DNA from: Macrostomum lignano
Lineage: Eukaryota
NCBI GenBank assembly: GCA_002269645.1
Contig: NIVC01003504.1
Coordinates: 30,611 to 94,610, forward strand
DNA length: 64,000 bases
Direction: 5' to 3'
Shown piece by piece: positions 33,513-60,596 of the stretch. The notes beneath the pieces are model-generated. The model had not been told where the DNA came from and searched no databases. It saw only the letters and a program-made list of their open reading frames with translations. How positions within the stretch are numbered: position 1 is the first letter of the stretch; every line of letters starts with the position of its first letter. Position numbers and translations under genes: made by a program.

Positions 33513-36500
33513 TCAGCTGTGCGATGGCGATACCGCCTTGGTCAGGGCGTGGGGCGGCGGCTGCAGCTGGTCGGAGGCGGTCGGCGTTGCAGCCGAGCCG
33601 CTTGTCGGAATCGGCGACGCCGGTAACGGGACAGCTGAGGACGTCGATAAGCTGGCAGAAGCCGCGGGCATCGTCAAGGCGACCGAGGTCGACGAAGGCT
33701 GCGAATGCGAAAGCGCAGCTACGGCAGACGGCGGCGCTCCGAAGCGGTTCATAGCGACGAATCGGCTGTTCTCCAGCCGGGTGATCAGCCGCTCGTCCTC
33801 CTGGCAGGCCTGGCCGCCCATCAGGCCGGGCTCGCCGACCACCATCACTTCGCCAGGTTGCGCCGGGTCCATCGGCTGCGGCATCGACGGGCGCGCCTGG
33901 CCCGAAGCCGCCGCCGCTGCGGCTCCCGCATTCCGCTTCCGGCCGCCACCTCCGCGACCGCCGCCGCCAGTCGGCTTGGCCTCTCCGCCGGTGGCCAAGT
34001 TGTTCTCGGCCGTGTTTTTCGTCCGCTTGCGCGACCTCGGCACTTTGGCGCCGGCGCCGCCACGCGCTTTGCCACTGGTCGCGGGCGCTGCTGCGACTGC
34101 AACGCCGCCCGGCGCGACGGCTGGGACAGCGGTGGGGCCGCCGTGGAGCCCGGCGACAACGAATCCGCTGCTGACATCGCCCCCGGGGCCGCTGGGCATT
34201 CGCTGCCAGCGCTGCTGCAGCATCTGGAAAGGGTCGAGTTGAATTCACAGAGCTTATTCACAATCGGGATGGGAGCTTATTCACAATCGGGATGGGAGCT
34301 TATTCACAGGAATGGGAGCTTATTCACAGGAATGGGAGCTTATTCACAGGAATGGGAGCTTATTCACAATCGGGATGGGAGCTTATTCACAGGAATGGGA
34401 GCTTATTCACAGGAATGAGAGCTTATTCACAACAGGAATGGGAGCTTATTCACAACAGGAATGGGAGCTTATTCACAGGAATGAGAGCTTATTCACAGGA
34501 ATGGGAGCTTATTCACAGGAATGAGAGCTTATTCACAGGAATGGGAGCTTATTCACAATAGGAATGGAGCTTATTCACAGGAATGGGAGCTTATTCACAA
34601 CAGGAATGGGAGCTTATTCACAGGAATGGGAGCTTATTCACAGGAATGAGAGCTTATTCACAGGAATGGGAGCTTATTCACAGGAATGGGAGCTTATTCA
34701 CAGGAATGGGAGCTTATTCACAGGAATGCGAGTTTATTCATAGGAATGGGAGCTTATTCACAGGAATAGGAGCTTATTCACAATAGGAATGGAGCTTATT
34801 CACAGGAATGGGAGCTTATTCACAACAGGAATGGGAGCTTATTCACAGGAATGGGAGCTTATTCACAGGAATGAGAGCTTATTTACAGGAATGGGAGCTT
34901 ATTCACAGGAATGGGAGTTTATTCATAGGAATGGGAGCTTATTCACAGGAATGGGAGCTTATTCACAGGAATGAGAGCTTATTCACAGGAATGAGAGCTT
35001 ATTCACAGGAATGGGAGCTTTTTCACTAAAGAAATGGGAGCTTATTCACAACAGGAATGGGGCCTTATTCACAACAGGAATGGGAGCTTATTCACAAAAG
35101 AAATGGGAGCTTATTCACAACAGGAATGGGAGCTTATTCACAACAGGAATGGGAGCTTATTCACAACAGGAATGGGACCTTAGTCACAACAGGAATGGGA
35201 CCTTATTCACAACAGGAATGGGAGCTTATTCACAAAAGAAATGGGAGCTTATACACAACAGGAATGGGACCTTATTCACAACAGGAATGGGAGCTTATTT
35301 ACAACAGGAATGGGAGCTTATTCACAAAAGAAATGGGAGCTTATTCACAACAGGAATGGGAGCTTATTCACAAAAGAAATGGGAGCTTATTCACAACAGG
35401 AATGGGAGCTTATTCACAACAGGAATGGGACCCTATTCACAACAGGAATGGGAGCTTATTCACAACAGGAATGGGAGCTTATTCACAACAGGAATGGGAC
35501 CTTATTCACAACAGGAATGGGAGCTTATTCACAACAGGAATGGGACCTCATTCACAACAGGAATGGGACCTTATTCACAACAGGAATGGGACCTTATTCA
35601 CAACAGGAATGGGACCTTATTCACAACAGGAATGGGAGCTTATTCACAACAGGAATGAGAACTTGTTCACAACGGTGACGAAAGCTGGTTCTTTGACCAT
35701 TGGAAGCAGTGAAAAAGTGAGCAGTGAACGCACCTGTTTTAAGCACTCCCTGGGCTCCAGGTCGCTGCACTTTTGCAAAGCCATCATCGCTTGCATCGGC
35801 TCCAGCACGGTGCTGGCCTGCAGCATGTGCACCACCTGAGGTGGCAGGCCCGCTTTGCTGACGGGCTTGGCTGTTGACAAGGGCAGACACGAAGGTCCGT
35901 TGCTACCCGACTGATGAGGCATAAGAGGCTGCTGCTGCGCGTGAGAGCGTGGCAGGAGCTCGTTGTAGCCTCGAATATCCATGCGCCATAGGCGAATTCT
36001 GGCGCGCTCGTTCCAGGCGAACTCCAGCACCAGCCGGATGTCCGCTAGCACCTGGGGGGGGGGCAAATTAAAAACAGACACATTATTAGTGGCCCCAGTC
36101 CAGAGACTGCTCACCTTGCACAGACACAGAATGGCCCCAGTTTAGAGACTGCTCACCTTGCACAGACAGAATGGCCCCAGTTTAGAGACTGCTCACCTTG
36201 CACAGACACAGAATGGCCCCAGTTTAGAGACTGCTCACCTTGCACAGACACAGAATGGCCCCAGTTTAGAGACTGCTCACCTTGCACAGACACAGAATGG
36301 CCCCAGTTTAGAGACTGCTCACCTTGCACAGACACAGAATGGCCCCAGTTTAGAGACTGCTCACCTTGCACAGACATAGAATGGCCCCAGTCCAGAGACT
36401 GCTCACCTTGCACAGACACAGAGTGGCCCCAGTCCAGAGACTGCTCACCTTGCACAGACACAGAGTGGCCCCAGTCCAGAGACTGCTCACCTTGCACAGA

Positions 36501-37234
36501 CACAGAGTGGCCCCAGTCCAGAGACTGCTCACCTTGCACAGACACAGAGTGGCCCCAGTCCAGAGACTGCTCACCTTGCACAGACACAGAGTGGCCCCAG
36601 TCCAGAGACTGCTCACCTTGCACAGACACAGAGTGGCCCCAGTCCAGAGACTGCTCACCTTGCACAGACACAGAGTGGCCCCAGTCCAGAGACTGCTCAC
36701 CTTGCACAGACACGGCTGGTTCCGCACATAGCTCGTCACCAGCTCTGCCGCATCGCAGGTCAGCACCAATGTCGGAGGCAGATGCGGCGCCGGTGACTGC
36801 ATCAGCATCTCATGCGGCGCCCGCAGCCACAGATAAGCCTCCTCGCAGGCGTCCATCAGCTGATGAAAGAAGCGCGGTATTAAACTCCGGCCGATGCAGT
36901 AGGATTTGGGCGGCAGGGCTACTCCGTCCTCCTCCATCAGCGACACCTGAAGCTGGGCGTCGTCCTCGAAGAATTCAGCACCGAACGCGTCCCACCAGAG
37001 CATCGGGGTGTCGCGAGGCCGCTGGGTCAGCCTGTTGTTCAAGTCGTGCACCCGCAGGTCGCCGCTGGTTTGTCCCGGACCCATCGGCCCAGGCGGCGGG
37101 CCGGGCACGAAGGTGTGCGGCGGGAGCGGCGGCCGCATCGTTGGTGGGTGAAGATGCTGGCCATGGTGCAGCATGGGGTGAAGATGCTGGGGCGGCGGTG
37201 GCGGCGGCGGCGGCCCGGGCGGCCCAGTCCGCAT
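33513..37234 (-). CDS. LDB1: LIM-domain-binding protein (LDB1/LDB2/Chip)
   Basis: Exons 37234-36701, 36051-35734 and 34223-33513 (1563 nt, in frame). Dimerisation domain LRVHDLNNRL..WWDAFGAEFFEDDA..YCIGRSLIPRFF; LCCD-region VLEPMQAMM..LEPRECLKQ; LIM-interaction domain EVMVVGEPGLMGGQACQEDERLITRLEN. An acceptor near 37341 suggests a further upstream exon. Confidence 0.93.
34245..35665. repeat. 20-24-bp minisatellite (GGAATGGGAGCTTATTCACA[ACA]) in LDB intron 2
   Basis: Direct tandem copies. Confidence 0.95.
36090..36712. repeat. 42-bp minisatellite in LDB intron 1 built from the exon/intron junction
   Basis: Unit (- strand) CTGTGTCTGTGCAAG|GTGAGCAGTCTCTGGACTGGGGCCACT; 15 copies of the donor motif. 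Confidence 0.95.
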
Positions 37235-38229: not shown

Positions 38230-39561
38230 CGAGGGGCATTCAAAAAGTTTTGGCAACTGCATATGCAGATATACTTTGGCTCAAGCAAAACGCACTAAAT
38301 TTTAGGGACATTTTTAGTAACATGCCTGAGACCACCATATAAATTTTCAGCTCAATGGCTTCACCCGTTATTGCACAATTCACACCTAACCATACCTACG
38401 TTTCAGCTTCTGACAAATTATGGAAAATATCAGCTCAGAAAACACGCGCTTCTACATCTTCATGCGCGCACAACTTGGAGAAAACGCCACCAAAATCCAT
38501 GCCAACTTAGCACAGGTGATAGGGGATCAAGCTCCATCTTATCGCACCGTTGCGCGATGGATTGAGGCTTTTGGCGCCGGCAGGAGCAGCCTCTGTGACG
38601 ACCCTCGATCGGGGAGGCCGAGCACAGCCGTGACCAAGAACAACATTGACGCTGTGCAATCGCTGGTGGCTGAGGACCCAAACATTTCTGTTGCCATGCT
38701 GAGCCAGACACTTGACATATCTGAGGGCAGCGTTTTCACCATCCTGCATGAGCAGCTGGGGCTCAGGAAGATCACAGCTCGTTGGGTGCCACATCAGCTC
38801 ACTGAGGAGCAGCGCCAGGAGCGGGTTCGCTGCAGTCAGGAGTTCTTGCGCTGCTTCGGTTCTGGCGGCACCAAGCGCCTCTCTGACATTGTCACCGGTG
38901 ACGAGAAGTGGTTTTACTACTTCCAGGTGCCCAACAAGAGCCAGAACAAGGTTTGGACTGGCGCAGATGAAGAGCGTCCAACAGTTCTGCGATCAGGATT
39001 TCGCTCACGCAAGCAGATGTTCGTTGTGTTCTTCAGCATCTGTGGCCCAGTAGCTGTTGTCATGGTGCCCAAAGGCCAGAATGTGAACGCCAGCTTCTAC
39101 ACCAGCACTGCCCTGCCAGCTGTCGTTGATTTCGTGCGGCAAAATCAACGCACGCGCTTGGAGTCAGGTCGCATCCACCTTTACCATGACAATGCGTCAA
39201 GCCATACTGCGGCGATGACTTCAGCATTTCTGGAGGAGAACCGGCTGAAAACCGTTCGCCACCCGCCCTACAGCCCGGACTTGGCTCCGTGCGACTTCTG
39301 GGCCTTCCCGAAACTGACCGAGAGGCTGGCTGGGCGCCAATTTCAGAGGCCGCAAGACCTGGCGCGCGCTATCAATTCAGAGTTGAGGGCATTCACTGAA
39401 TCGGAGTACCGCGGCGCCTTTGATTCGTGGCTACGGAGGCATCAGAAGTGCATAGAGCGCGGCGGAGACTACATAGAAGGACTGTAAACCCTTACTTTTA
39501 GAATAATGAGCTTGCACTAGATTTTAGTAGCCTGTTGCCAAAACTTTTTGAATACCCCTCG
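38230..39561 (+). mobile_element. Full-length mariner (Tc1/mariner, DD34D) DNA transposon
   Basis: 28-bp TIRs CGAGGGGCATTCAAAAAGTTTTGGCAAC / GTTGCCAAAACTTTTTGAATACCCCTCG (1 mismatch), TA duplicated on both sides, 1332 bp. Confidence 0.96.
38420..39487 (+). CDS. Mariner transposase, 355 aa, uninterrupted
   Basis: WVPHQL, IVTGDEKW, YHDNASSH and HPPYSPDLAPCDF motifs; 34 residues between the second and third Asp. Confidence 0.96.
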   Translation: MENISSENTRFYIFMRAQLGENATKIHANLAQVIGDQAPSYRTVARWIEAFGAGRSSLCDDPRSGRPSTAVTKNNIDAVQSLVAEDPNISVAMLSQTLDISEGSVFTILHEQLGLRKITARWVPHQLTEEQRQERVRCSQEFLRCFGSGGTKRLSDIVTGDEKWFYYFQVPNKSQNKVWTGADEERPTVLRSGFRSRKQMFVVFFSICGPVAVVMVPKGQNVNASFYTSTALPAVVDFVRQNQRTRLESGRIHLYHDNASSHTAAMTSAFLEENRLKTVRHPPYSPDLAPCDFWAFPKLTERLAGRQFQRPQDLARAINSELRAFTESEYRGAFDSWLRRHQKCIERGGDYIEGL

Positions 39562-41047: not shown

Positions 41048-41547
41048 TTATTAGCACCCTTTTAAATCTTATCTCGGTTTTAAGATCTTACAAAAAGTCA
41101 AGATTTGTGACTATGTGACTATTAGTGACTATGATATTATCATATAATTTATATTTAATATACATCAAGTTACTAACAAGCTCAATATTAATTTATATAA
41201 TAATTGTTTCTCCTTTTATTCTATTATTATAATTGTACATGTTTAACAAATAACAATACTAGCATTGTAAAATAAAATAGTGTAAATAGGCCTACTGGAT
41301 ACTAATCAGGCTTAATCTCAAATCTTGATTGAATCCCAATTATCTCAAAAGTATAATAGATCTTATCTTGAGTCTCAAAAATCTTTAAAATAGGCTATCA
41401 TGTCTTCTTCGAAAATTGATACTCTTGATGTCTTAAATAACAAAATACAGCATACACCAACACAACACAACACAAAAGTGAATTCAGCTCATGTTAATAC
41501 CTATACGTACGTACACCACCACTCACGACCACGCATTTGTTTCCCCA

Positions 41548-41926
41548 GGGTCTCCCTAAAACACGCACCGCACCGCCCCGACCGCTACACATTATAACAT
41601 TTTTGTCAATGCAGTATTTTGCTTGCAAAGAGAACTATTTGTTGTAAGAGGAACAGAATAATTAACTTTATTTATTACCTTAAATATTATTATTATTTTT
41701 CATATTCTCGTTTGCATTATTAAATTAAATTATTATTATTTTATTAATATTATTATTAATATCACTTATTATACATCGAATTAAATATTTCACAGTAAAA
41801 AAAACTAAATTTTATAAAAGCTTAAAGCTTAACATAAAATGCATTTTGAAATGTCTTCAGTTATAGTCTAATTTGTTTTAACGTGTAGCGCTGTGAGGCG
41901 GGGCGGTGCGTGTTTTAGGGAGACCC
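41548..41926. mobile_element. 379-bp MULE-like MITE nested in the left arm of the foldback element
   Basis: ~43-bp TIRs GGGTCTCCCTAAAACACGCACCGC...; 9-bp TSD GTTTCCCCA at 41539-41547 and 41927-41935; AT-rich interior. Confidence 0.85.
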
Positions 41927-41996
41927 GTTTCCCCATTGGTATTCGCATTGATATTCAAATTTTAACAAAAGCAAAATACTAAAAGCAACCCGTAGC

Positions 41997-42681
41997 ATGA
42001 AACTTTACACAGAGTAAACTGCAACCGTGAAACGACTATTGGTCAAGTTTCAGCTCGATATGTAACTTTGGCTCTGAGCAGGAGCGATTTTCGATGTGTT
42101 CCATTTAAAATACATGTGATTCCAAAATTCATATTGATATTCGAGTACAGGTACTTCTGCTTCACCGATCTTGACGAAACTTTACACAGAGTAAACTGCA
42201 ACCGTGAAACGACTATTGGTCAAGTTTCAGCTCGATATGTAACTTTGGCTCTGAGCAGGGGCGATTTTCGATGTGTTCCATTTAAAATACATGTGATTCC
42301 AAAATTCATATTGATATTCGAGTACAGGTACTTCTGCTTCACCGATCTTGACGAAACTTTACACAGAGTAAACTGCAACCGTGAAACGACTATTGGTCAA
42401 GTTTCAGCTCGATATGTAACTTTGGCTCTGAGCAGGGGCGATTTTCGATGTGTTCCATTTAAAATACATGTGATTCCAAAATTCATATTGATATTCGAGT
42501 ACAGGTACTTCTGCTTCACCGATCTTGACGAAACTTTACACAGAGTAAACTGCAACCGTGAAACGACTATTGGTCAAGTTTCAGCTCGATATGTAACTTT
42601 GGCTCTGAGCAGGGGCGATTTTCGATGTGTTCCATTTAAAATACATGTGATTCCAAAATTCATATTGATGTTCGAGTACAG
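41997..42681 (+). repeat. 177-bp tandem array, left arm (~3.9 units)
   Basis: 59-aa periodic ORF; near-identical units starting GAAACTTTACACAGAGTAAAC. Confidence 0.95.
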
Positions 42682-45171
42682 GTGGAGGAGATGGCGCAAC
42701 GTGACACAGTGGTCATTCTCGGAGACCTGAACGCAGTTCTGCGTAGGTCCGAGCGATCGCTGTTTGTGACAGCGCGCGAGAACGGCAACACCGGAGCGCT
42801 AGAGGACTTCCTGGAGAGACAGGACATGGTGTCGGCCAACACCAGATTCCGCAAGTCACCGGGCAGGCTCGCGACCTTCGTGGGCTGCAAGCGGAGGCGG
42901 CGGAACGCGCGCGGCCGGAACGCTACGCGGAGGCTGGCACAGCTCGACCACGTGCTTGTGCGCTTTCGTGTGCGCCGCCGCGTCACCAACTGCCGCACCA
43001 TTACGCCGCTGGCTCTGCGGTCCGACCATCGGCTGCTCATCTGCGACCTTCGGCTTCGGGACCCGCTCTACCGTCCGCCAAAGCGGCCACCGCGGCGCTA
43101 CTACGTCGCTTTGCCGGTGCCTTTGTCACTGCGCTGGGCGACAAGCGTGGAGGAGCCGAGTACGCGGAGGTGAGCGCTGCAGTTCGAGCCGATGCGGAGC
43201 AAGCAGTCCCACTGATGCGACCGGCCCAGCGGTCTGGCAGGACGACCCGCGATCGACGAAGCGAGGGAAGATCTGGAGAGGCTCCGTCTGAGTGGGCGGC
43301 AAACTCGCGAGGCGGAGGAGGCTCTGGCGGCTGTCTACCTGCAGCGGCAGCAGTCCGCTGTCGATGACGCCAACCAAGCCGTCTCTGCCGCAGGGCCCGA
43401 TTCCAGAGGGCGCGTGGCCTGGTCCGTCATCAACACTCTGACGGGGCGAAAGCGGCGCATCGCGCTCAACCAGGCAGGCGACATTCCGGATGAGCGCAGG
43501 TACGAGCTGCGCGAGTTCTTCGCCGCCATTGTCAACGCGCCGCCCCCTCCGCTTCCAGAAAATCTGAGGCTGCCGCCGGAGACGCCGTTGCCGGCGGAGG
43601 AGAGCTTCAACGTTGCCCCAGTCAGTACAGCCGACGTTGTGAAGTTCGCTCGGCAGTCGCCGGGCGCCAAAGCGCTTGGTCCGGACGAGATGCCCACCGA
43701 GGCGCTGCGGATCCACTGCGTGGCCACTGAGGTCGCCAGAGTGATGAACCGCGTGCTTTCCGGTGAGGTGGCGCCAAACGAATGGACCACGGCGCACATC
43801 GTCGCCATTCCAAAGAAGCCGGGCACCACCAAGCTCGAGGAGCATCGAGGCATCTGCCTACAATCCTGCGCCGCGAAGCTGTTCAGCCGCATGCTGCTAT
43901 CGCGGTTGCAGACTGTGCTGGACCCGTACCTGTGGCCTGAGCAGAACGGATTCCGGCCCCATCGCAGCACAGTGACGCAGATCCTGGCTCTTCGGCGAGT
44001 CATCGAGGAGGCGCGCATCCGCCAGTTGACCCTGATCCTGATCTTCGTCGATTTCAGGAAGGCCTTCGACTCGGTCGTGAGGGACGCGCTCCCAGAGGTG
44101 CTCCGTGCGTACAACGTGCCAGACCTGCTGATTTCTGCTGTCATGGCGCTATACCACGGCACGACGGCTGCTGTCTCAACACCGGACGGCCTATCGGATT
44201 TCTTCGAGACATCCTCCGGGGTGCTCCAGGGAGATACGCTAGCGCCGTTCCTATTTATTCTGGTGCTTGACTGGGTGCTACGGACTGCTCTGCCTTCCAA
44301 CGACGACGGCTTCCTGCTGCGGCGACGCGTGGGTCGACGCCAACCGGAGAGACGGCTCAGCGTGCTTGGCTACGCCGATGACCTCGCCCTGCTGTCCTCG
44401 ACCGTCGAGGGCGCCCAACGACAGCTGGACAGACTGGTTGCCGTTGCGGCGAGCGTCGGCCTGGTGGTCAACACGCAGAAGACCGTCGTGCTATGCGTGC
44501 CGGACGACACCGAGGCTGCAATCTTCTGCCGAGGCGCTGACGGACAGGCGAGTGAGCTTCCAAGATGTCAGCAGTTCGTCTACCTCGGCGGTCTGGTTCC
44601 CGACGTCCGCGAGGATCTGCGGCGTCGACGAGGACTTGCCTGGGCTGCCTTTCGTTCTATAAGGTCAGTCCTGCAGTCCGAGGCCCTACCGGACCGCCAG
44701 AGGGCGGCGCTGTTCCAGGCGGTGATCGAGACCGTCCTGTTATACAACGCCGAGACCTGGACGCTGATAGACTCGCTCGAGGCTCAAGTCGACGCGGCGC
44801 ACGCTGGCCTGCTGCGCGCCGCCTTCAAGATCGGCAACGAGCGAGTCACCAACACGGCGCTCTATCATCGCGCCGGCCTGGCCCGTCCTAGCGATCTGCT
44901 GCGCCGTCGGCGACTCCAGCTGGCAGGCCACGTCATCCGCGCCGAGGCCTACTGTCCGGAGCCGGTGCAGGAGGTGCTGCTACTTACGTTGCAGGCACCC
45001 TACCGGCGGGGACAGGCGAGGACTCGGCGCTACGTCGACTGTCTGCTGGCTGACGCCGGCGCCCCGGACTCTGCCGGCGGTGCGGCTTTTGTTCGCGCCC
45101 AAGCTTCGAAGCGCGCCATCTGACGCTGCTTTTGCGAACTGGCAGCGTACTCTGTTGTTGTTGTTGTTGTT
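42682..45171 (+). mobile_element. 5'-truncated RTE-clade non-LTR retrotransposon (APE endonuclease remnant plus RT)
   Basis: APE motifs ILGDLNA, LDHVLV and SDHRLL (42682-43173), then a frame break; RT ORF follows; very short 3' UTR and (TGT)n tail at 45153-45171. Confidence 0.92.
43414..45123 (+). CDS. Non-LTR reverse transcriptase (RTE-like), 569-aa ORF
   Basis: GPDEMP, EQNGFR, FVDFRKAFDSV, GVLQGDTLAPFLF, YADDLALL, GLVVNTQKT and FVYLGG motifs. Confidence 0.93.
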   Translation: MAWSVINTLTGRKRRIALNQAGDIPDERRYELREFFAAIVNAPPPPLPENLRLPPETPLPAEESFNVAPVSTADVVKFARQSPGAKALGPDEMPTEALRIHCVATEVARVMNRVLSGEVAPNEWTTAHIVAIPKKPGTTKLEEHRGICLQSCAAKLFSRMLLSRLQTVLDPYLWPEQNGFRPHRSTVTQILALRRVIEEARIRQLTLILIFVDFRKAFDSVVRDALPEVLRAYNVPDLLISAVMALYHGTTAAVSTPDGLSDFFETSSGVLQGDTLAPFLFILVLDWVLRTALPSNDDGFLLRRRVGRRQPERRLSVLGYADDLALLSSTVEGAQRQLDRLVAVAASVGLVVNTQKTVVLCVPDDTEAAIFCRGADGQASELPRCQQFVYLGGLVPDVREDLRRRRGLAWAAFRSIRSVLQSEALPDRQRAALFQAVIETVLLYNAETWTLIDSLEAQVDAAHAGLLRAAFKIGNERVTNTALYHRAGLARPSDLLRRRRLQLAGHVIRAEAYCPEPVQEVLLLTLQAPYRRGQARTRRYVDCLLADAGAPDSAGGAAFVRAQASKRAI

Positions 45172-46362
45172 TGGAATCACATGTATTTTAAATGGAACAC
45201 ATCGAAAATCGCTCCTGCTCAGAGCCAAAGTTACATATCGAGCTGAAACTTGACCAATAGTCGTTTCACGGTTGCAGTTTACTCTGTGTAAAGTTTCGTC
45301 AAGATCGGTGAAGCAGAAGTACCTGTACTCGAATATCAATATGAATTTTGGAATCACATGTATTTTAAATGGAACACATCGAAAATCGCCCCTGCTCAGA
45401 GCCAAAGTTACATATCGAGCTGAAACTTGACCAATAGTCGTTTCACGGTTGCAGTTTACTCTGTGTAAAGTTTCGTCAAGATCGGTGAAGCAGAAGTACC
45501 TGTACTCGAATATCAATATGAATTTTGGAATCACATGTATTTTAAATGGAACACATCGAAAATCGCTCCTGCTCAAAGCCAAAGTTACATATCGAGCTGA
45601 AACTTGACCAATAGTCGTTTCACGGTTGCAGTTTACTCTGTGTAAAGTTTCGTCAAGATCGGTGAAGCAGAAGTACCTGTACTCGAATATCAATATGAAT
45701 TTTGGAATCACATGTATTTTAAATGGAACACATCGAAAATCGCCCCTGCTCAGAGCCAAAGTTACATATCGAGCTGAAACTTGACCAATAGTCGTTTCAC
45801 GGTTGCAGTTTACTCTGTGTAAAGTTTCGTCAAGATCGGTGAAGCAGAAGTACCTGTACTCGAATATCAATATGAATTTTGGAATCACATGTATTTTAAA
45901 TGGAACACATCGAAAATCGCTCCTGCTCAAAGCCAAAGTTACATATCGAGCTGAAACTTGACCAACAGTCGTTTCACGGTTGCAGTTTACTCTGTGTAAA
46001 GTTTCATCAAGCTCGGTGAAGCAGAAGTACCTGTACTCGAATATCAATATGAATTTTGGAATCACATGTATTTTAAATGGAACACATCGAAAATCGCTCC
46101 TGCTCAGAGCCAAAGTTACATATCGAGCTGAAACTTGACCAATAGTCGTTTCACGGTTGCAGTTTACTCTGTGTAAAGTTTCATCAAGATCGGTGAAGCA
46201 GAAGTACCTGTACTCGAATATCAATATGAATTTTGGAATCACGTGTATTTTAAATGGAACACATCGAAAATCGCTCCTGCTCAGAGCCAAAGTTACATAT
46301 CGAGCTGAAACTTGACCAATAGTCGTTTCACGGTTGCAGTTTACTCTGTGTAAAGTTTCATG
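45172..46362 (-). repeat. 177-bp tandem array, right arm (~6.7 units, inverted relative to left arm)
   Basis: Same 59-aa periodic ORF on the - strand. Confidence 0.95.
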
Positions 46363-47434
46363 CTACGGGTTGCTTTTAGTATTTTGCTTTTGTTAAAATT
46401 TGAATATCAATGCGAATATCAATGGGGAAACAAATGCGTCTCACGACCACGATAAATAAAATTTCCGCAAATTGCACTTTAAATTATTGTAACTGCTATA
46501 ACAAAATATAAAAGAGACAACAGTTTAACACAATATATATCCAGTAAGCATCCAAAAAAGGTTTTTCATCAACAAAATAATATGATTCTGTGATAATATT
46601 TGCATCTATTCAGCGCAGCTTAGTCGTGTGTGTGTGCCTCGGGTCGTTGACCATGCAATCGCCAAACTTCCTCGACTTCTTTATTTTTTGGCTTTTATAA
46701 TTAAAAAAGGTTAAAGTGACTGTGTCTTCTGTAATCAAAAAGTGACACTTTGTGTCTAATAAGTGCATTTAAAATAAATTTTATTTGGTTTTATTAATGA
46801 TATTCCTGTTTTTACTAATGTTTTTAGGCACTCGCATAGAATCCAGTTCTAGTAGATAAAACTTGAAAATTTTAATTTTGATCATTTTATGTCCATACCT
46901 ACTACAGCTACAGCGTACAGGCTATGCTTTACATAGTCATAGATAAGGAGTTCCAGTGTGGGCTTTTTCAGTTGTGCGATATGGAAAATAGAAAAGGGGT
47001 ATACTTTAAATATTATTAATATAAAAATGGAAACAAGATAAGATACCATGATCCATGTTTACCAATATTATCAATATATAATTGAGTAGCTTTCTAATGG
47101 CATTAAGCATATGTCATGTGCATGTATACTTTTGAATAGGCCTAAATGTAAAAATTTATACTTTATGAAACTTTTGTTTTAATGCTTTTAATGCATGTTT
47201 ATTTCTTTTTCTTTTTTTCTGCAATGGAGTGACATAGTGTATGTGCCTATATATGCCAATATGCCAAATAAATTTATAACATTATAATATCATATTAAAG
47301 TGGATAAATCACACTTTAATTGTAAAGTTTCATTGGCAAAAAATATATTGGCCAAAGTTGTTGCCAAAGTGATCCAAATGTGTCGCCAAAATGGCTATCG
47401 CCAAAGTGACTTGTCACCAAAGTGATTGTAATTC

Positions 47435-47859
47435 TTATAATATATCGGACACTGGAAAGCTGCAACAGGATAGTCTATGGCCAAAACATTAACAAGTAAA
47501 CAAGTCTTTACAGAATAAATAAAAAGTATTATGGTCAAATTGCCAACAAGCAGTAAAAGCTTTATATGCTATAATAGTAGGAAATCTAATATAGGATATT
47601 CCCAAATGTTTTTATTGGGTTTAGTTAATACCATAATTCCTCTAAGTATATTTCAAATAAGGCTTGTAAAGTCTTATTCATGTGGCATGCAGCATATAGC
47701 CTTGCTAAGCAAACTTTACTTTTAATTATTTGTTATTTGTCAACTTGTTAAAAATCATTCATGTTTCAACTAGACCATAGACCTTTTTCCAAGTCAAAAA
47801 ATATCAAACATTCTGGCCATAGACTATGATGCAGCTTTCTGATGTTAGATATATTATAA
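47435..47859. mobile_element. Old MITE-like remnant with ~50-bp degenerate inverted ends
   Basis: TTATAATATATCGGACACTGGAAAGCTGCAACAGGATAGTCTATGGCCA versus TGGCCATAGACTATGATGCAGCTTTCTGATGTTAGATATATTATAA. Confidence 0.5.
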
Positions 47860-48799
47860 TAAGTTTTGAAACAGAATTAGTGCTTAATCAAGCTAATTCT
47901 CTTAAAAGTACTTAAAATAGTTTGTAGATTACTTTTTTATCAAGTAAAAATAATTTAATGAATAAAACTTGACAATTGCTGACAAAATAAAAAGCATAAA
48001 TATCATAGGTAATAAAAGTAGAGCTTATAGGTTACAAGACATTTTTATAGAAGTGAGGATATATATAACTTTGGCCAGTCTAACTAATGTTAAACTGACT
48101 GACATATAATCTACATAACAAACTAAGCAAATAGTATAATTTGGCATCATAACTCAAGTATAGTCAAAATTGTCATATTCACAATATACTCTATAATTTT
48201 AAATTGTCATATGATGATGATGACTTGTCCAATCCAAGTCCAAGTGCTTAGAATTAGTCCAAGGCTTTGCATCTTTTAAGCAGATAATATAAATGCAAAT
48301 TTTTAAAGTTGAACATTTTTTGACAAACAAAAACATATTGTTGCTATGAGCAAAGATCTTTGTGCAGCTAATGAAATATAATATAACTATTTAGTGAATG
48401 CAACAGTGTCCAAATGCTAAGACAATGACAATTTAGATAATTTAATTGTTTTTCTAGTAGTTTAAAGCATATGACAACCTTAAATATGACAACTTCAGCT
48501 AAAGCCTATGACTTATCCACCCTTTATCTCTTAGTCAGCCATCTTTATTTAATGTTGGTGAAACTGATTGGTCAAAGTTGTATATATAAGCTTAGTTTAT
48601 AAATGAGGCCATTGTGAAAACATGTGATATGTCTAATATAGTAATAGTGACTTAAAACCAAAAGGCATCTATTTATACAAACTTTTTAGTATAAAAACTA
48701 AGACATGTGGCAGCCAGCCGCACTGGAAACCCCCCACCTCTGTCTAGCTGAGGTGGGGTGGGTACGCGCCAAGCTAGCTGGCTCACTAAGCCGGGAGGG

Positions 48800-49618: not shown

Positions 49619-52600
49619 ATGGAGAAAGTCACCTATAGAGTAGTAGAGGAGTGCATTAGCCGCCTGAATGAGATCTATCATCAGCATCCACATGAGCCGG
49701 AGGTTGCTCTGTTCTGCCCAGATGCGGCCAGCCTGCGTCACCGATTGAAGTCCACGCTATTGAAGATTATCTTTCTGACGCCGGCTGATTTCGGCGCCAA
49801 AGGCGAAGACATTCTATGGCGCAAAGGCTTCTACGAGGTGTTGGCTTGCATTAAAAAGTACCGCCAGTCCAACAGGCTCTCGGGGCAGGTTGAGGCCCTG
49901 TACCGGGCGCATCTGATCAGCGGGCTGGGCTTCTACAATCAGTTGCTCTCCCGGGTGCTGCTGGAGTATCCGGTGGCAGCTGACGACGCTGCCGGCCTCG
50001 CCGAGGTGGCCGCTGTTGGTTGCGCCGATTTTGCACCGGCGCCGAAGCTTCTACTTAGCGCCGACCTGACTACCGATGCTGGCGCCAACGCTGCCGCCGC
50101 GGACTGGGCGCGCGGCGCCGTGCACAGGTGCCTGATGCACATCGGGGATCTGTACAGATATCTGCGCGAGTTTCAAGGCGAAGTGGCGCTGGCGCTTGTT
50201 CAGCGCTATTACGGCGCCGCTGCCAGATTTGAGCCCATGATTGGCCTGCCGTACAACCAGCTGGGCACATTGGATGTTGGCAACTACTACAACCTCACTG
50301 CCGTGTATTATTATCTTAGGTGCGCTGCTGTTTGTTAAAACTTAGCTGCTAGGGAGGACGAACACACAGCTGGAATCTGGATAATTCCACACTAATATGC
50401 ACACCGATAATCGCATTCGAAATCCTTTCTACTTATTTTGTTCCTGCAGATGCCTGGCCTGCGAGCAGCCGTTCGAAGGCTCCAGACGCAACCTGGCCAA
50501 AATTTTAAACAAAAATCAGCGCCGATTCGAATCCCTGCCACCGTTGGATTCCGCGGCGGCAGCTGCCGGTTCTGCCGAAGCCGGCCGACCGCACAAGCCC
50601 GTGAAGCAGTTCGCTGTGCGGTTTGTTTATCTGATTGGCCGCCTGCTGCAGCCTCACCAGCTGATGCAGCATCAGCGGCGTCAAAACTACCGTCAGCTTG
50701 ACGCCGAGCTGAACGCGCTGTGCCAGTCAGTCCTTGCCGGCCTCTCAGTCTGCCTGTCCGACTGCGACGATGGCGACGAAGCCGCATGCCTGGCCGTGCG
50801 CGCCTCCGAGGTCGACCCGATGCGGCCGCACCGCCTGGCCGACTCTGCTGTGCTGCAGGCCGCGCTGGCCGCCGTCCTCTGCCTGGACTCGCTGGCGGCC
50901 GCCAACTCCCGACATGCGCACGCCTGCACCGCCTTCTGCCTGGGCCTGTTTGCCTGCGTGCTGCGCTGCGCCCTGGCCAGGTGCCGGCACGCGCTGCAGA
51001 CCGTGGCGACTGCGGCACCCACGGCTGAGCTTGACGCTGGGGAGCCGACTGCTGATGACAGCGATGTCGATGAAGACGATGCAGCTGCAGAAGAGGTCGA
51101 AGGCGGCGGGGAGGACGAAGACGAAGACGATGCTGCCGGCGATTTTCACGGCTTCTCCGCTCCGAGGCTGCGTCGACGACGTCGAAGGAGGCGGCGACGG
51201 CGCGGCTCTGGCAGTGAAGGCGATGCTTTTTCGTCATCGGGCGAGTCCAGCGACTGTCAGTTGGCGTTCGGTTACGACGAGGATGACGAGGAGGTTGAAG
51301 GCGAGGATGGAGAAGTTGGAAGGGAAGGAGAGGACAGCAACGCCGAAGATGAGGCCGCAATGGCTGCGGCCGACCCACCGTCGACCAGCGTTGGCGGCGG
51401 CGGCGGCCTGCCGTCGTTTTGCTTCAGCTACGGCATTCCATCAGCGTTGATGTTTCACGACGAAGAGAACGACGATAAGTCGGAGGCTGCAGAGTTGGGT
51501 CAGGATGGCCCGCCTGCTGATGCAGAAAATTCCAACGCAAACGTCTCGACTGTTTGTGAGGCGGATGCGCAAAAGGACGATTCCACTGCGGCCGCTGCCG
51601 AGGCCGTTGAATTGGCAATTAGTCGGGTTCGCCTGCTGCAGACTGTCAAACTGCTGCTAGACTGGATGCTGTGCCAGCCTCATCTCCTCAGCCGAGCAGT
51701 GCAGGTGAGCTTTGAGCTTGGCTTTTCGCCAAAATGCAGACAAAGGGTGTTGCCAAAGGGTTTCCAAAAAATCGTCATACTACTTCTAGCATTGCATATC
51801 AGCAGTCAAAGTTACTCCGGCCTTTCACCCGAACTTCCACAGTCTTCCTGCCTGCCGCTGTGGGACAGTCTGTCAGCTTTGCTCAACCTGCTGCCCGCTC
51901 CGCCTGGCGAGGACAGCGGCGTCATCTGCCCGGAGCCGGAGCGCTCGGCAGCCCTGCCGGAGGACGCGCACGCCCGCGGCCTCCGCCTGTTCCAGCCGGT
52001 GCAACGCCACCTGGACTTCGCCGCCGCCGGCCAGGCTGCCCGTCTGGATGAGTCGCGCCTGCGCCTGGCCGCCATCCGCCGGTTCGGCTTCCTGGCTGTG
52101 CAGAATGACCAGCTGGCGTTCGAGTTCGACTCGACTGCTGGCCACTTTCTGGGGCCAACGGCTGTCGCACAGGCCAGCAGGGATGCCCAGATGCGGAATC
52201 TGGCCCAGCTGCGCCTCATCAATCAGGTGCAGCAGTTGGAGTCCGCCGTGTCTCAGGCGACGCCAGCAATCACCGTGAGCTCCTCAAGTGCCAATTATTA
52301 ATTAACTGCAAGTTTGTCAGTCGGCTCGCTTACATTACTAACAGTAGCTTACCCGTCCATTTTCGCTCCGCAGTCGTCGCACGCCATTCCGTCGCGTCGG
52401 TGCCTCACAGACGGCCTCGACCGGCTGAAAGCCTTGGTCAGCAGTCGGCGCTGCATCCTGGTGCTGCCGCGCAGCTCCATCGACTATCTGGACAGGCTGA
52501 AGCAGACCAGCCAGGCTGCCAGGCGCGCCAGCCGTTTCCTAGAAACCGAGCTCCAGTCGGGCCGCGGCCTTATCAACACGCACGATTATCCATCCTTGAC

Positions 52601-53177
52601 TGCCTGCGCCAAGCAGCTGGCCCCGGCCACCACCGTATTCCTGATTTGCCGCGGCGAGTCTCCGCCCCAGCTTGAGCTGCCGTTTCCAGTGCGAGAGCTG
52701 CACGAATTCGTGCGACAGGCTTGGCGCCGGGCCAAGCTGGTTGAGCACTCGAGACCTGTTGCTATGGGGAAGGGCGGCAGTTCAAATCATTACTTCGGGT
52801 GTGTCATAAGTAATGTCACTGATGTGAAAACAGACGAACTTGCAATCGCAGATGAACAAAACTGTACCACTCAACAACATAGAGTCCCCCAATATCAATC
52901 ACCCTCTGGCAGTGCTCATACAGCTTGTCTACCTCAGCCTACAGGTGTTTTTCCTCCAACTGCCGTATCCAGTGCAACGCGGCCTGTTTTACCTCTTCAT
53001 GGTTTGCGAAACCTTCTTGGAAAATTCAGCCTTCAGCCATTTGAACAGGAATCTCTTGCACAAGTTGAAGTCCGGGCTGTAGGGACTCTGTCAGAGCAGA
53101 TTCACTCGAAAATTCGAAACAGCCTTCAGGTGTGCAGCCGTGCGGTGTCCATCTGCCACAGAACCTCGTCCAGGTGA
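49619..53177 (+). CDS. SMG5: Nonsense-mediated decay factor SMG5 (EST1/TPR domain plus catalytically degenerate PIN)
   Basis: Exons 49619-50319, 50450-51704, 51843-52274 and 52374-53177 (3192 nt, in frame). EDILWRKGFYEV, YRAHLISGLGFY, HRCLMHIGDLYRY, GLPYNQLGTL, YYYLRC; acidic insertion; PIN-like LVLPRSSIDYLDRLKQ..ARRASRFLETE with the first acidic site absent (IPSR), as expected for SMG5 rather than SMG6. Confidence 0.9.
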
Positions 53178-53750: not shown

Positions 53751-53859
53751 TATTTTCTTATTAAGGAGAAATGGTGCTTTTGATCTTGTGTTTGGGCTGT
53801 AATTGTAGTTATTAATTCTATAGTCCGTTATCCGAAATTAGCGTTTACGATCCACCCTT

Positions 53860-54215
53860 CCAAATCCTCAGATGTGATCCTCCACCCTCCCAGATCCTCA
53901 GGTGTGATCCTCCACCCTCTCAGATCCTCATGTGTGATCCGCCACTCTCCAAAATCCTCAGGTGTGATCCGCCACTCTCCCAGATCCTCAGGTGTGATCC
54001 GCCACTCTCCCAGATCCTCAGGTGTGATCCGCCACTCTCCCAGATCCTCAGGTGTGATCCGCCACTCTCCCAGATCCTCAGGTGTGATCCGCCACTCTCC
54101 CAAATCCTCAGGTGTGATCCGCCACTCTCCCAAATCCTCAGGTGTGATTCGCCACCCTCCCAGATCCTCAGGTGTGATCCGCCACTCTCCCAGATCCTCA
54201 GGTGTTAACTGCCAC
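53860..54215. repeat. 30-bp minisatellite (GATCCTCAGGTGTGATCCGCCACTCTCCCA)
   Basis: Direct tandem copies. Confidence 0.95.
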
Positions 54216-54569
54216 CCTCTCAAATACTTCAAAACCAGTTTCTAGCTTAAGAGCAGCAGTTTCGCACCTAAATTATCCATAATAATATTTTACTCCAGAT
54301 ACGCCAGTCTTTAAATAATTAGTCTATCGTGCTGGATAGTCTATCGGACTACCAATTCTAACAATAATACTTTATGGTTGTCACTGACTAGTTATATACA
54401 CTGTTTTCTGCTTTTTAGCAGTAGTAATTTTGGTTGCCTTGCCGCGCGCATATCTGTGTGCTTTTAGTGTACTTTTAATAAACAGTGATTAAGAAATCGC
54501 TTTGCGTGTCACGTGACTTTTGATTTTGCCGCGGTGCAGTTCTGGTTATTTTTATTTTATTTGTCTACA

Positions 54570-57500
54570 GGTGTCTGCCATTGAAGTATATCACTCGGGG
54601 TCTTTTATTAAAGTTTTTGTCACTTCAGTGTCTACCGTTGAAGGGTCCGTCTCTCGAGTGTCTGTCACTCTGGTGTCTTCGATTGAAGTTTCTGTCACTC
54701 GGGTGTCTGCTATTTAGGTTTCTGTCACTCAGGTGTCTGTCATTCCGGTGTCTACCATTGAGGTGTCTGTCACTCCGGTGTCTACCGTTGAAGTGTCTGT
54801 CTCTCGGGTGTCTGCTATTGAAGTGTCTCTCGAGTGTCTGCTATTGAAGTGTCTCTCGAGTGTCTGCTATTGAAGTGTATGTCTCTCGGGTGTCTGCTAT
54901 TGAAGTGTCTCTCGAGTGTCTGCTATTGAAGTGTCTGTCTCTCGGGTGTCTGCTATTGAAGTGTCTCTCGAGTGTCTGCTATTGAAGTGTATGTCTCTCG
55001 AGTGTCTGCTATTGAAGTGTCTGTCTCTCGAGTGTCTGCTATTGAAGTGTATGTCTCTCGAGTGTCTGCTATTGAAGTGTCTGTCTCTCGAGTGTCTGCT
55101 ATTGAAGTGTATGTCTCTCGAGTGTCTGCTATTGAAGTGTATGTCTCTCGAGTGTCTGCTATTGAAGTGTATGTCTCTCGAGTGTCTGCTATTGAAGTGT
55201 ATGTCTCTCGAGTGTCTGCTATTGAAGTGTATGTCTCTCGAGTGTCTGCTATTGAAGTGTCTGTCTCTCGAGTGTCTGCTATTGAAGTGTATGTCTCTCG
55301 AGTGTCTGCTATTGAAGTGTCTGTCTCTCGAGTGTCTGCTATTGAAGTGTATGTCTCTCGAGTGTCTGCTATTGAAGTGTCTGTCTCTCGAGTGTCTGCT
55401 ATTGAAGTGTATGTCTCTCGAGTGTCTGCTATTGAAGTGTATGTCTCTCGAGTGTCTGCTATTGAAGTGTATGTCTCTCGAGTGTCTGCTATTGAAGTGT
55501 ATGTCTCTCGAGTGTCTGCTATTGAAGTGTATGTCTCTCGAGTGTCTGCTATTGAAGTGTATGTCTCTCGAGTGTCTGCTATTGAAGTGTCTGTCTCTCG
55601 AGTGTCTGCTATTGAAGTGTATGTCTCTCGAGTGTCTCCTATTGAAGTGTATGTCTCTCGAGTGTCTGCTATTGAAGTGTATGTCTCTCGAGTGTCTGCT
55701 ATTGAAGTGTCATTCGGTGTCCTCTATTGAAGTGTCTGTCTCTCGAGTGTCTGCTATTGAAGTGTATGTCTCTCGAGTGTCTGCTATTGAAGTGTATGTC
55801 TCTCGAGTGTCTGCTATTGAAGTGTCTGTCTCTCGAGTGTCTGCTATTGAAGTGTCTGTCTCTCGAGTGTCTGCTATTGAAGTGTATGTCTCTCGAGTGT
55901 CTCCTATTGAAGTGTATGTCTCTCGAGTGTCTGCTATTGAAGTGTATGTCTCTCGAGTGTCTGCTATTGAAGTGTCATTCGGTGTCCTCTATTGAAGTGT
56001 CTGTCTCTCGAGTGTCTGCTATTGAAGTGTATGTCTCTCGAGTGTCTGCTATTGAAGTGTATGTCTCTCGAGTGTCTGCTATTGAAGTGTCATTCGGGTG
56101 TCCTCTATTGAAGTGTCTGTCTCTCGAGTGTCTGCTATTGAAGTGTATGTCTCTCGAGTGTCTGCTATTGAAGTGTATGTCTCTCGGGTGTCTGCTATTG
56201 AAGTGTCTCTCGAGTGTCTGCTATTGAAGTGTCTGTCTCTCGGGTGTCTGCTATTGAAGTGTCTCTCGAGTGTCTGCTATTGAAGTGTATGTCTCTCGGG
56301 TGTCTGCTATTGAAGTGTCTCTCGAGTGTCTGCTATTGAAGTGTCTGTCTCTCGGGTGTCTGCTATTGAAGTGTCTCTCGAGTGTCTGCTATTGAAGTGT
56401 ATGTCTCTCGAGTGTCTGCTATTGAAGTGTCTGTCTCTCGAGTGTCTGCTATTGAAGTGTATGTCTCTCGAGTGTCTGCTATTGAAGTGTCTGTCTCTCG
56501 AGTGTCTGCTATTGAAGTGTATGTCTCTCGAGTGTCTGCTATTGAAGTGTATGTCTCTCGAGTGTCTGCTATTGAAGTGTATGTCTCTCGAGTGTCTGCT
56601 ATTGAAGTGTATGTCTCTCGAGTGTCTGCTATTGAAGTGTATGTCTCTCGAGTGTCTGCTATTGAAGTGTCTGTCTCTCGAGTGTCTGCTATTGAAGTGT
56701 ATGTCTCTCGAGTGTCTGCTATTGAAGTGTCTGTCTCTCGAGTGTCTGCTATTGAAGTGTATGTCTCTCGAGTGTCTGCTATTGAAGTGTCTGTCTCTCG
56801 AGTGTCTGCTATTGAAGTGTATGTCTCTCGAGTGTCTGCTATTGAAGTGTATGTCTCTCGAGTGTCTGCTATTGAAGTGTATGTCTCTCGAGTGTCTGCT
56901 ATTGAAGTGTATGTCTCTCGAGTGTCTGCTATTGAAGTGTATGTCTCTCGAGTGTCTGCTATTGAAGTGTATGTCTCTCGAGTGTCTGCTATTGAAGTGT
57001 CTGTCTCTCGAGTGTCTGCTATTGAAGTGTATGTCTCTCGAGTGTCTCCTATTGAAGTGTATGTCTCTCGAGTGTCTGCTATTGAAGTGTATGTCTCTCG
57101 AGTGTCTGCTATTGAAGTGTCATTCGGGTGTCCTCTATTGAAGTGTCTGTCTCTCGAGTGTCTGCTATTGAAGTGTATGTCTCTCGAGTGTCTGCTATTG
57201 AAGTGTATGTCTCTCGAGTGTCTGCTATTGAAGTGTCTGTCTCTCGAGTGTCTGCTATTGAAGTGTCTGTCTCTCGAGTGTCTGCTATTGAAGTGTATGT
57301 CTCTCGAGTGTCTCCTATTGAAGTGTATGTCTCTCGAGTGTCTGCTATTGAAGTGTATGTCTCTCGAGTGTCTGCTATTGAAGTGTCATTCGGTGTCCTC
57401 TATTGAAGTGTCTGTCTCTCGAGTGTCTGCTATTGAAGTGTATGTCTCTCGAGTGTCTGCTATTGAAGTGTATGTCTCTCGAGTGTCTGCTATTGAAGTG

Positions 57501-60500: not shown

Positions 60501-60530
60501 GTCACTCGGGTGTCTTCGTTGAAGTGTCTG
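54570..60530. repeat. ~6-kb array of a 30-bp unit (TCTCTCGAGTGTCTGCTATTGAAGTGT[A/C]TG) with higher-order structure
   Basis: Roughly 200 tandem copies; homogeneous centre, diverged edges. Confidence 0.97.
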
Positions 60531-60596
60531 TCGCCGAACCGCTCACATCCCCCGCCGCTGCCCACCACTCCTGCGCAAGCAGCCGCCACCGCAAGA

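What the first reader, a model, noticed from the sequence alone, without database searches (positions are those of the whole stretch)
41522..46448. Foldback-like transposon with inverted arms of 177-bp tandem repeats and a 9-bp TSD
Seen: a 4.9-kb unit flanked by a perfect CTCACGACC duplication. Each arm has an ~80-bp unique terminus (ACGCATTTGTTTCCCCATTG..GCAACCCGTAGCAT) followed by near-identical 177-bp units, ~3.9 on the left (+) and ~6.7 on the right (-). There is no DNA transposase inside. Known: modular long TIRs with unequal tandem-repeat numbers and 9-bp TSDs define Drosophila FB/Galileo- and Mutator-type foldback elements, which drive rearrangements and can seed satellites. Inference: this is a possibly undescribed non-autonomous foldback family whose nucleosome-length unit could spread satellite DNA, and whose read-through transcript would fold into ~700 bp of dsRNA.
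Basis: partly seen in the sequence, partly recalled or inferred. Interest (0 to 1): 0.8.

Follow-up and report, generated by a model that had tools for sequence, protein, structure and literature searches.

The report
Foldback-like transposon copy in a flatworm
This is a real but ordinary kind of selfish DNA: one dead copy of a "foldback" cut-and-paste transposon in the flatworm Macrostomum lignano. Its two long inverted arms are built from 177-bp tandem repeats, and it has since been hit by two other mobile elements.

Summary
A 4,909-bp unit (41531-46439) is flanked by a perfect 9-bp duplication, CTCACGACC. It has inverted arms, each made of a 79-bp unique terminus plus 177-bp tandem units (3.9 units on the left, 6.7 on the right).

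The left terminus is split after base 17 by a nested 379-bp MITE with its own 9-bp duplication. The whole interior (42684-45169) is a 5'-truncated, RTE-like non-LTR retrotransposon, so no original middle domain is left.

The host is Macrostomum lignano: the SMG5 exons downstream are identical to the UniProt protein.

The best reading is a non-autonomous foldback-like class II element that inserted as one unit. A Mutator/Phantom-type or Merlin-type transposase supplied in trans probably moved it. It was later immobilised by the MITE, and a LINE replaced its centre.

This architecture is already known from Tetris (220-bp units), Galileo-F (about 210-bp units), FB and Tm1.

The claims about a family, satellite seeding and small RNAs therefore remain untested.

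Verdict: a new member of a known kind, of modest interest.

The parts
41522..41530 (.). Left copy of the 9-bp target-site duplication, CTCACGACC
   Evidence: identical 9-mer directly against both inverted termini
41531..41547 (+). Outermost 17 bp of the left terminus (ACGCATTTGTTTCCCCA), cut off from the rest by the nested MITE. Its last 9 bp (41539-41547, GTTTCCCCA) are one copy of the MITE's TSD
   Evidence: 17/17 match to the right terminus at 46423-46439
41548..41926 (.). Nested 379-bp MITE with TIR GGGTCTCCCTAAAACACGCACCGC... (30 nt at 97%, extending to about 53 nt at 87%). It has an AT-rich interior, no ORF, and a 9-bp TSD GTTTCCCCA (41539-41547 and 41927-41935)
   Evidence: (I11)
41927..41997 (+). 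Remainder of the left unique terminus. It begins with the second copy of the MITE TSD and holds the tandem 12-mer CATTGGTATTCG/CATTGATATTCA
   Evidence: 70/71 match to the right terminus
41998..42683 (+). Left array: 3 full 177-bp units plus a 155-bp partial unit
42684..45169 (+). 5'-truncated RTE-like non-LTR retrotransposon. It starts at about residue 111 of a roughly 936-aa endonuclease+RT single ORF, has two in-frame stops and a short 3' UTR, and ends in a (GTT)n tail at about 45153-45169. It has no TSD of its own and occupies the exact inversion centre
   Evidence: relatives L001 and L002 share the tail
45170..46360 (-). Right array: 6 full 177-bp units plus a 129-bp partial unit, inverted relative to the left array
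46361..46439 (-). Intact right 79-bp unique terminus (reverse complement ACGCATTTGTTTCCCCATTGATATTCGCATTGATATTC...CCCGTAGCA)
46440..46448 (.). Right copy of the 9-bp target-site duplication, CTCACGACC

Best explanation
The unit is one copy of a non-autonomous, foldback-like class II (TIR) transposon in Macrostomum lignano. It lies in the AT-rich spacer between a LIM-domain-binding gene (minus strand) and SMG5 (plus strand).

**Shown:**
- It is bounded by inverted 79-bp termini and a 9-bp target duplication.
- Each arm continues into an array of near-identical 177-bp units, and the arms differ in unit number.
- It encodes no transposase.
- A 379-bp MITE is nested in the left terminus.
- A 5'-truncated RTE-like LINE fills the centre.

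**Inferred mechanism:**
- The element was cut out and pasted as one unit by a transposase supplied in trans. That transposase recognises the termini and makes a 9-bp staggered cut. This is typical of Mutator/Phantom (FB-type) transposases and also possible for Merlin.
- The motif ATTGATATTCG occurs twice in tandem in each terminus and once in every 177-bp unit. It may act as a reiterated transposase-binding site, as shown for Galileo and proposed for Tetris.
- Unit numbers drifted apart through unequal exchange or slippage. The three outermost right-arm units share the junction variant T1, which suggests local duplication.
- The MITE insertion after base 17 and the LINE insertion came after the last transposition and left this copy immobile.
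- The LINE either inserted with a target deletion or was captured at a break in the palindrome centre. Either way it removed any original middle domain.
- If transcribed across, the element would form about 750 bp of dsRNA.
For: - TSD and termini.
- 757-765-nt arms at about 99% identity.
- 177-bp arrays and their variant pattern.
- No transposase domain inside, only Exo_endo_phos and RVT_1.
- Nested MITE with its own 9-bp TSD, which shows that enzymes making 9-bp duplications have been active in this genome.
- LINE boundaries set by homology to full-length relatives and by the shared (GTT)n tail.
- Possible CAG(G) microhomology at the LINE's 5' junction.
- 11-mer shared by terminus and unit.
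- RNA minimum-free-energy fold with 753 arm-to-arm pairs.
- Host identity.
- Published precedents with the same architecture and 8-10-bp TSDs: Tetris (PMC4079207) and Tm1 (PMC3169594). Tandem repeats as secondary transposase-binding sites in Galileo.
Against: - Only one copy was seen, so mobility as a family is inferred from a single TSD.
- No autonomous partner or transposase was found in the window. The only transposase nearby is a mariner-type ORF, which would make TA duplications, not 9-bp ones.
- The shared 11-mer is only about 2 SD above shuffled controls.
- The terminal bases (ACGCATTT...) do not resemble any terminal motif I can assign to a superfamily.
- No middle domain survives.
- Arm lengths are unequal, so the pre-LINE structure is unknown.
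Confidence: 0.78

Rival explanations
1. This is a one-off palindromic derivative rather than a foldback family. A conventional TIR transposon carrying a 177-bp array next to one end inserted here and made the 9-bp TSD. That end was then copied in inverted orientation in situ, by hairpin formation or strand switching during gap repair or break repair. The LINE was captured at the same break.
For: - No middle domain remains, and the LINE sits exactly at the inversion centre without a TSD.
- The arms are about 99% identical.
- No second copy was found anywhere searchable.
Against: - Both outer termini are complete and each abuts the TSD. An in-situ fold-back of one end would have to replace the other end exactly at its boundary.
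- The arms differ in unit number and in variant order. That fits older, independently evolving arms.
- Families with exactly this architecture are well documented.
Confidence: 0.12
2. This is an assembly artefact. A long-read chimera (missed adapter) or a collapsed repeat created a false inverted duplication of a 177-bp array around a LINE.
For: The M. lignano genome is hard to assemble: 13% tandem repeats and duplicated chromosomes. Palindromic chimeric reads are a known long-read artefact (own knowledge).
Against: - The structure is asymmetric in ways an artefact would not produce. A MITE sits in one arm only, the arms have 3.9 versus 6.7 units with different variants, and the centre is non-palindromic.
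- The two flanks are unrelated to each other.
- A matching 9-bp duplication sits exactly at the two termini.
Confidence: 0.03
3. These are two independent head-to-head insertions of a shorter element (terminus plus array), later bridged by the LINE. The flanking 9-mer identity would then be coincidental.
For: The arms differ in unit number and variants. The LINE separates them completely.
Against: - An exact 9-bp match at both outer junctions has a chance of about 4e-6.
- Each half would lack a second terminus.
- No solo half-element is seen elsewhere in the window.
Confidence: 0.03

Closest known systems
Tetris (Drosophila virilis/americana foldback element; Dias et al. 2014, PMC4079207)
   Same: - Non-autonomous, with no ORF of its own.
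- TIRs built from a unique flanking domain followed by a variable number of long (about 220-bp) tandem repeats.
- 8-10-bp TSDs.
- The flanking domain shares a short stretch with the repeat unit (37 bp in Tetris, 11 bp here).
- Repeat number differs between arms and alleles.
   Different: - Different phylum, with no reason to expect sequence relatedness (not tested).
- The unit is 177 bp rather than 220 bp, and the unique terminus is 79 bp rather than up to 866 bp.
- There is no inner TIR domain, and no middle domain survives here.
- Tetris repeats are shown to form kb-scale satellite arrays. No free 177-bp array has been seen here.
Galileo, especially the F subfamily of D. mojavensis (P superfamily; PMC3573991)
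   Same: - Long, internally repetitive TIRs.
- About 210-bp tandem repeats whose number differs between the two TIRs of one copy.
- The repeats carry secondary transposase-binding sites.
   Different: Galileo makes 7-bp TSDs and encodes, or depends on, a THAP/P-type transposase. The TSD here is 9 bp, so P-superfamily membership is contradicted.
FB of D. melanogaster and Tm1 of Meloidogyne (Mutator/Phantom-type foldback elements; PMC3169594)
   Same: - 9-bp TSDs.
- Composite TIRs of variable length containing tandem repeats.
- Most copies are non-coding.
- Nested insertions of other TIR elements are seen in Tm1 copies.
   Different: - Their TIR repeats are short (10-31 bp in FB by my own knowledge; about 14 bp in Tm1), against 177 bp here.
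- A MULE/FLYWCH transposase is known for them, and none is known here.
- Tm1 has asymmetric 7-bp end motifs, which are absent here.
Merlin superfamily
   Same: 8-9-bp TSDs, presence in flatworms, and sometimes long TIRs.
   Different: No Merlin transposase or terminal motif was tested. Merlin elements are not known to me for TIRs made of long tandem units.

Membership tests
Foldback-like elements (structural class) | Long terminal inverted repeats that make up most of the element's own sequence | tested here: met
   The arms are 765 and 1,270 nt. Everything else inside is a nested MITE or a LINE.
Foldback-like elements (structural class) | Modular TIRs with internal tandem repeats whose number varies between arms | tested here: met
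   A 79-bp unique domain plus 3.9 versus 6.7 units of 177 bp.
Foldback-like elements (structural class) | Target-site duplication showing transposition as a unit | tested here: met
   Perfect 9-bp CTCACGACC at both junctions.
Foldback-like elements (structural class) | Several dispersed copies, each with its own TSD (a family) | not testable with these tools
   No second copy in the window or in metagenome contigs. M. lignano genomic DNA is not in the reachable collections.
Mutator/Phantom (MULE) superfamily, including FB and Tm1 | 8-11-bp (mostly 9-bp) TSD | tested here: met
   9-bp TSD. This is consistent but not exclusive, because Merlin also gives 8-9 bp.
Mutator/Phantom (MULE) superfamily, including FB and Tm1 | A MULE (with or without FLYWCH) transposase encoded between the same termini in autonomous copies | not testable with these tools
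   None in the element or the window. The rest of the genome is unavailable.
P superfamily (Galileo) | 7-8-bp TSD | tested here: not met
   The TSD is 9 bp. Galileo's is 7 bp.
P superfamily (Galileo) | THAP-domain P-type transposase | not testable with these tools
   Absent from the element and the window. The genome is not searchable.
RTE-like non-LTR retrotransposons (central insert only) | Single ORF of about 900-1,000 aa with an N-terminal AP-endonuclease and an RT, in an element of about 3.3 kb | tested here: met
   Relatives P0005, P0007 and P0013 are 936-941 aa with Exo_endo_phos plus RVT_1, on contigs of 3.4-3.6 kb. The window copy aligns from residue 111.
RTE-like non-LTR retrotransposons (central insert only) | Very short 3' UTR ending in a short microsatellite rather than poly(A) | tested here: met
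   About 30-nt UTR plus (GTT)5-6 in the window. The same tail is in L001 and L002.
RTE-like non-LTR retrotransposons (central insert only) | Phylogenetic placement of the RT within the RTE clade | not tested
   No reference RT set was on hand. The clade name rests on architecture only.

The most novel reading that the evidence does not exclude
This copy could represent an undescribed flatworm foldback family whose 177-bp TIR unit is one source of the unusually large tandem-repeat fraction of the M. lignano genome (13%). A second possibility is that the LINE sits exactly at the inversion centre because long palindromes break at their centre, and LINE cDNA was used to patch the break. That patch would have made the palindrome asymmetric and so stabilised it.
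Probability: 0.12. Interest if true: 0.55.

Novelty: new member of a known kind. Interest (0 to 1): 0.3.

Why it matters
If more copies exist, this would be the first foldback-type transposon described in a flatworm, as far as the searchable literature shows. It would be a third independent case, after Tetris and Galileo-F, of roughly 200-bp tandem units inside TIRs.

Such elements promote inversions and deletions by ectopic recombination and hairpin formation. They can seed satellites and can yield long dsRNA. All of this is relevant to M. lignano, a transgenesis and regeneration model with an unstable karyotype and a genome that is difficult to assemble.

As a single dead copy it has little consequence beyond repeat annotation. 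It lies 3.2 kb upstream of SMG5.

Tried and rejected
1. **Repeat ORF as a handle for other copies.** 177 = 59 codons, and one frame is open through both arms, giving ORFs of 220 and 436 aa. I used the ORF as a protein query and found no homolog among 5.8 billion proteins. An open circular frame arises in 9% of shuffles. I reject a coding role.
2. **Exact-pattern scans of metagenome contigs** with a 34-mer from the unit and a 26-mer from the terminus gave 0 hits.
3. **Fetching M. lignano genomic loci** through the mariner ORF and the SMG5 protein, to look for paralogous or empty sites: neither is on record.
4. **The unit as a structured RNA or DNA, or a known RNA family.** Folding gives z = 0.04, and there are no Rfam or tRNA hits in the window.
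5. **Homology between spacers of the many minisatellite arrays**, to see whether the window is built from one repeat-carrying TE: none.
6. **Mariner ORF at 38420-39487 as the mobilising transposase.** Rejected, because Tc1/mariner elements make TA duplications (own knowledge).
7. **Penelope-like or LTR-like explanation for inverted repeats around an RT.** Rejected. The RT belongs to a LINE that carries an AP-endonuclease, has its own (GTT)n 3' end, and has no sequence relationship to the arms.

Full report
**Observation.**
- The sequence at 41300-46700 shows a 4,909-bp unit (41531-46439) bounded by CTCACGACC at 41522-41530 and 46440-46448.
- The inverted-repeat search gives arms 41927-42683 and 45675-46431: 757 nt, 99% complementary. 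It also gives a series of register-shifted matches that reflect tandem structure.
- Tandem Repeats Finder reports period 177, with 3.9 copies at 41999-42683 and 6.7 copies at 45170-46359, at 98-99% identity.
- The right terminus is intact (reverse complement ACGCATTTGTTTCCCCATTGATATTCGC...). The left terminus is not.
- After base 17 of the left terminus comes a 379-bp insertion (41548-41926) with 30-nt TIRs, GGGTCTCCCTAAAACACGCACCGC.... These extend to about 53 nt at 87%. The insertion is flanked by GTTTCCCCA on both sides.
- Removing this MITE and one copy of its duplication restores a 765-nt left arm. It matches the outer 765 nt of the right arm with 10 mismatches and no indels.
An exact 9-mer at both junctions has a chance of about 4e-6.

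**Anatomy of the arms.**
- Each arm is a 79-nt unique domain followed by 177-nt units. The left arm has L1-L3 plus 155 nt of L4. The right arm has R1-R6 plus 129 nt of R7.
- Every unit differs from the consensus at 3 positions or fewer. The order of variants differs between the arms.
- R1-R3 all carry the junction variant T1, which suggests local duplication of the outermost unit. G86 marks L2-L4, R4 and R6.
- The terminus contains a tandem 12-mer, CATTGATATTCG/CATTGATATTCA. The 11-mer ATTGATATTCG recurs once in each 177-nt unit. This is only about 2 SD above shuffled controls, so it is a lead for a reiterated transposase-binding site and not a result.
- The unit on its own has no unusual secondary structure (z = 0.04).
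- One reading frame is open through the unit because 177 = 59 codons. There is no homolog among 5.8 billion proteins, and 9% of shuffles also have an open frame. I treat this as coincidence.

**Centre.**
- Positions 42684-45169 are GC-rich, 64-66% against 39% for the unit.
- In one frame they translate into the C-terminal part of an AP-endonuclease plus a complete reverse transcriptase, with two in-frame stops.
- Relatives in the protein database are single-ORF proteins of 930-940 aa (Exo_endo_phos plus RVT_1) on contigs of 3.3-3.6 kb. They include several M. lignano UniProt entries.
- The window copy aligns from residue 111 of P0005, so it lacks roughly the first 0.75 kb.
- It ends with a UTR of about 30 nt and (GTT)5-6. 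Two relatives fetched from metagenome contigs end in the same repeat, which fixes the 3' boundary at 45169.
- This is RTE-like in architecture. I did not run a phylogeny.
- The LINE has no target duplication. Its 5' junction may share CAG(G) with the unit.
- The LINE abuts plus-oriented units on its left and minus-oriented units on its right, so it sits exactly at the inversion centre. No original middle domain of the host element survives.

**Host and setting.**
- The two large ORFs at 49619-50338 and 50397-52301 are identical, apart from one in-frame intron, to Macrostomum lignano SMG5, UniProt A0A1I8IGD5. The window is therefore M. lignano.
- Upstream lie a LIM-domain-binding exon on the minus strand (36350-37234) and an intact-looking mariner-type transposase ORF (38420-39487).
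- The element lies in a 10-kb AT-rich spacer, 3.2 kb upstream of SMG5.
- The rest of the window is packed with unrelated minisatellites. That agrees with the published 13% tandem-repeat content of this genome.

**Interpretation.**
- Paired inverted termini directly against a 9-bp duplication mean that the unit inserted as a whole by a cut-and-paste transposase making a 9-bp staggered cut.
- Nothing inside encodes a DNA transposase, so the copy is non-autonomous.
- Long modular TIRs with unequal numbers of internal tandem units define the foldback-like structural class.
- Published members with long units are Tetris (220 bp, TSD 8-10 bp) and Galileo-F (about 210 bp).
- Galileo makes 7-bp duplications, so the 9-bp TSD here argues against the P superfamily. 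It favours Mutator/Phantom, as for FB and Tm1. Merlin also gives 8-9 bp (own knowledge). The superfamily cannot be settled without the autonomous partner.
- The nested MITE also made a 9-bp duplication. This shows that an enzyme of that kind was active after the foldback arrived.
- The MITE separates the outer 17 bp from the rest of the left terminus and splits the first copy of the tandem 12-mer. Together with the LINE it very probably immobilised this copy (inference).
- The arms are 98.7% identical and the LINE has only two stops, so all three events are fairly recent.

**Consequences.** A minimum-free-energy fold of the full 4,909-nt RNA pairs 753 positions of the left arm with the right arm, in two registers. 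The satellite-seeding idea is untested: the 177-bp unit is absent from the other 59 kb of the window.

**Limits.**
- I could not reach M. lignano genomic DNA. Exact-protein look-ups failed, two metagenome scans found nothing, and the protein route through the repeat ORF found nothing.
- Copy number, TSD consistency, the autonomous partner and the empty site all remain open.
- No paper in the searchable library mentions foldback elements in Macrostomum.

**Rivals.**
- Misassembly is very unlikely. The structure is asymmetric (a MITE in one arm, different unit counts and variants, a non-palindromic centre, unrelated flanks), and it has a TSD.
- Two independent head-to-head insertions would not give a matching 9-mer.
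- A one-off in-situ fold-back of one end of a conventional element cannot be excluded with a single copy. However, it requires exact replacement of the other end.

**Verdict.** This is a real, correctly located, foldback-like non-autonomous DNA transposon copy carrying two nested insertions. It is a new member of a known kind, possibly the first reported from a flatworm. Interest is modest until a genome-wide census is done.

Noticed in passing
window 1-37000 and 53800-64000: The density of unrelated minisatellite arrays is extreme. There are about 40 arrays with periods of 12-45 bp, each 0.2-1.6 kb, plus one 5.8-kb array of a 30-bp unit at 54748-60532. They are separated by short unique spacers that share no homology with each other. 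This fits the published 13% tandem-repeat content of M. lignano.
   Followed up: partly
window 38420-39487 (+): An uninterrupted 355-aa mariner/Mos1-type transposase ORF (HTH_48, DDE_3, Transposase_1), possibly an intact Tc1/mariner copy. This exact protein is not in the gene-position index. I did not look for its TIRs or TA duplication.
   Followed up: partly
window 41548-41926: A 379-bp MITE with GC-rich TIRs (GGGTCTCCCTAAAACACGC...), an AT-rich core and a 9-bp TSD, nested in the foldback terminus. It is a second element type that makes 9-bp duplications in this genome. Its family is unknown.
   Followed up: partly
window 42068-42730 (+) and 44980-46290 (-): The 177-bp unit is 59 codons long and open in one frame, which gives 220-aa and 436-aa repeat ORFs. 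There are no homologs, and about 9% of shuffles also have an open frame. Gene predictors may call these ORFs as spurious proteins.
   Followed up: yes
window 47432-47862: A MITE-like structure of about 431 bp with TIRs of about 55 bp (TTATAATATATCGGACACTGGAAAGCTGCAACAGG...) in the AT-rich spacer. TA-rich ends suggest a Tc1/mariner-type MITE. I did not examine the TSD.
   Followed up: no
L001 (JGI 3300043259) and L002 (ENA ERZ27299534): Close relatives (70-85% aa identity) of the central LINE occur on environmental metagenome contigs and share the (GTT)n tail. Macrostomum-like or other flatworm DNA is therefore present in public metagenomes. L002 looks like a full-length 3.4-kb copy with an intact 936-aa ORF.
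   Followed up: partly
window 49619-53177 (+): The SMG5 gene. The 634-aa ORF reads through a 138-nt in-frame intron (46 codons absent from the UniProt protein). The exons are otherwise identical to A0A1I8IGD5.
   Followed up: yes
window 20332-21774 (-) and 36350-37234 (-): A C2H2 zinc-finger ORF (480 aa) and an exon of a LIM-domain-binding (LDB/Chip-like) gene. The 3' part of the LDB ORF runs into a 42-bp minisatellite (36090-36713) that stays in frame.
   Followed up: no
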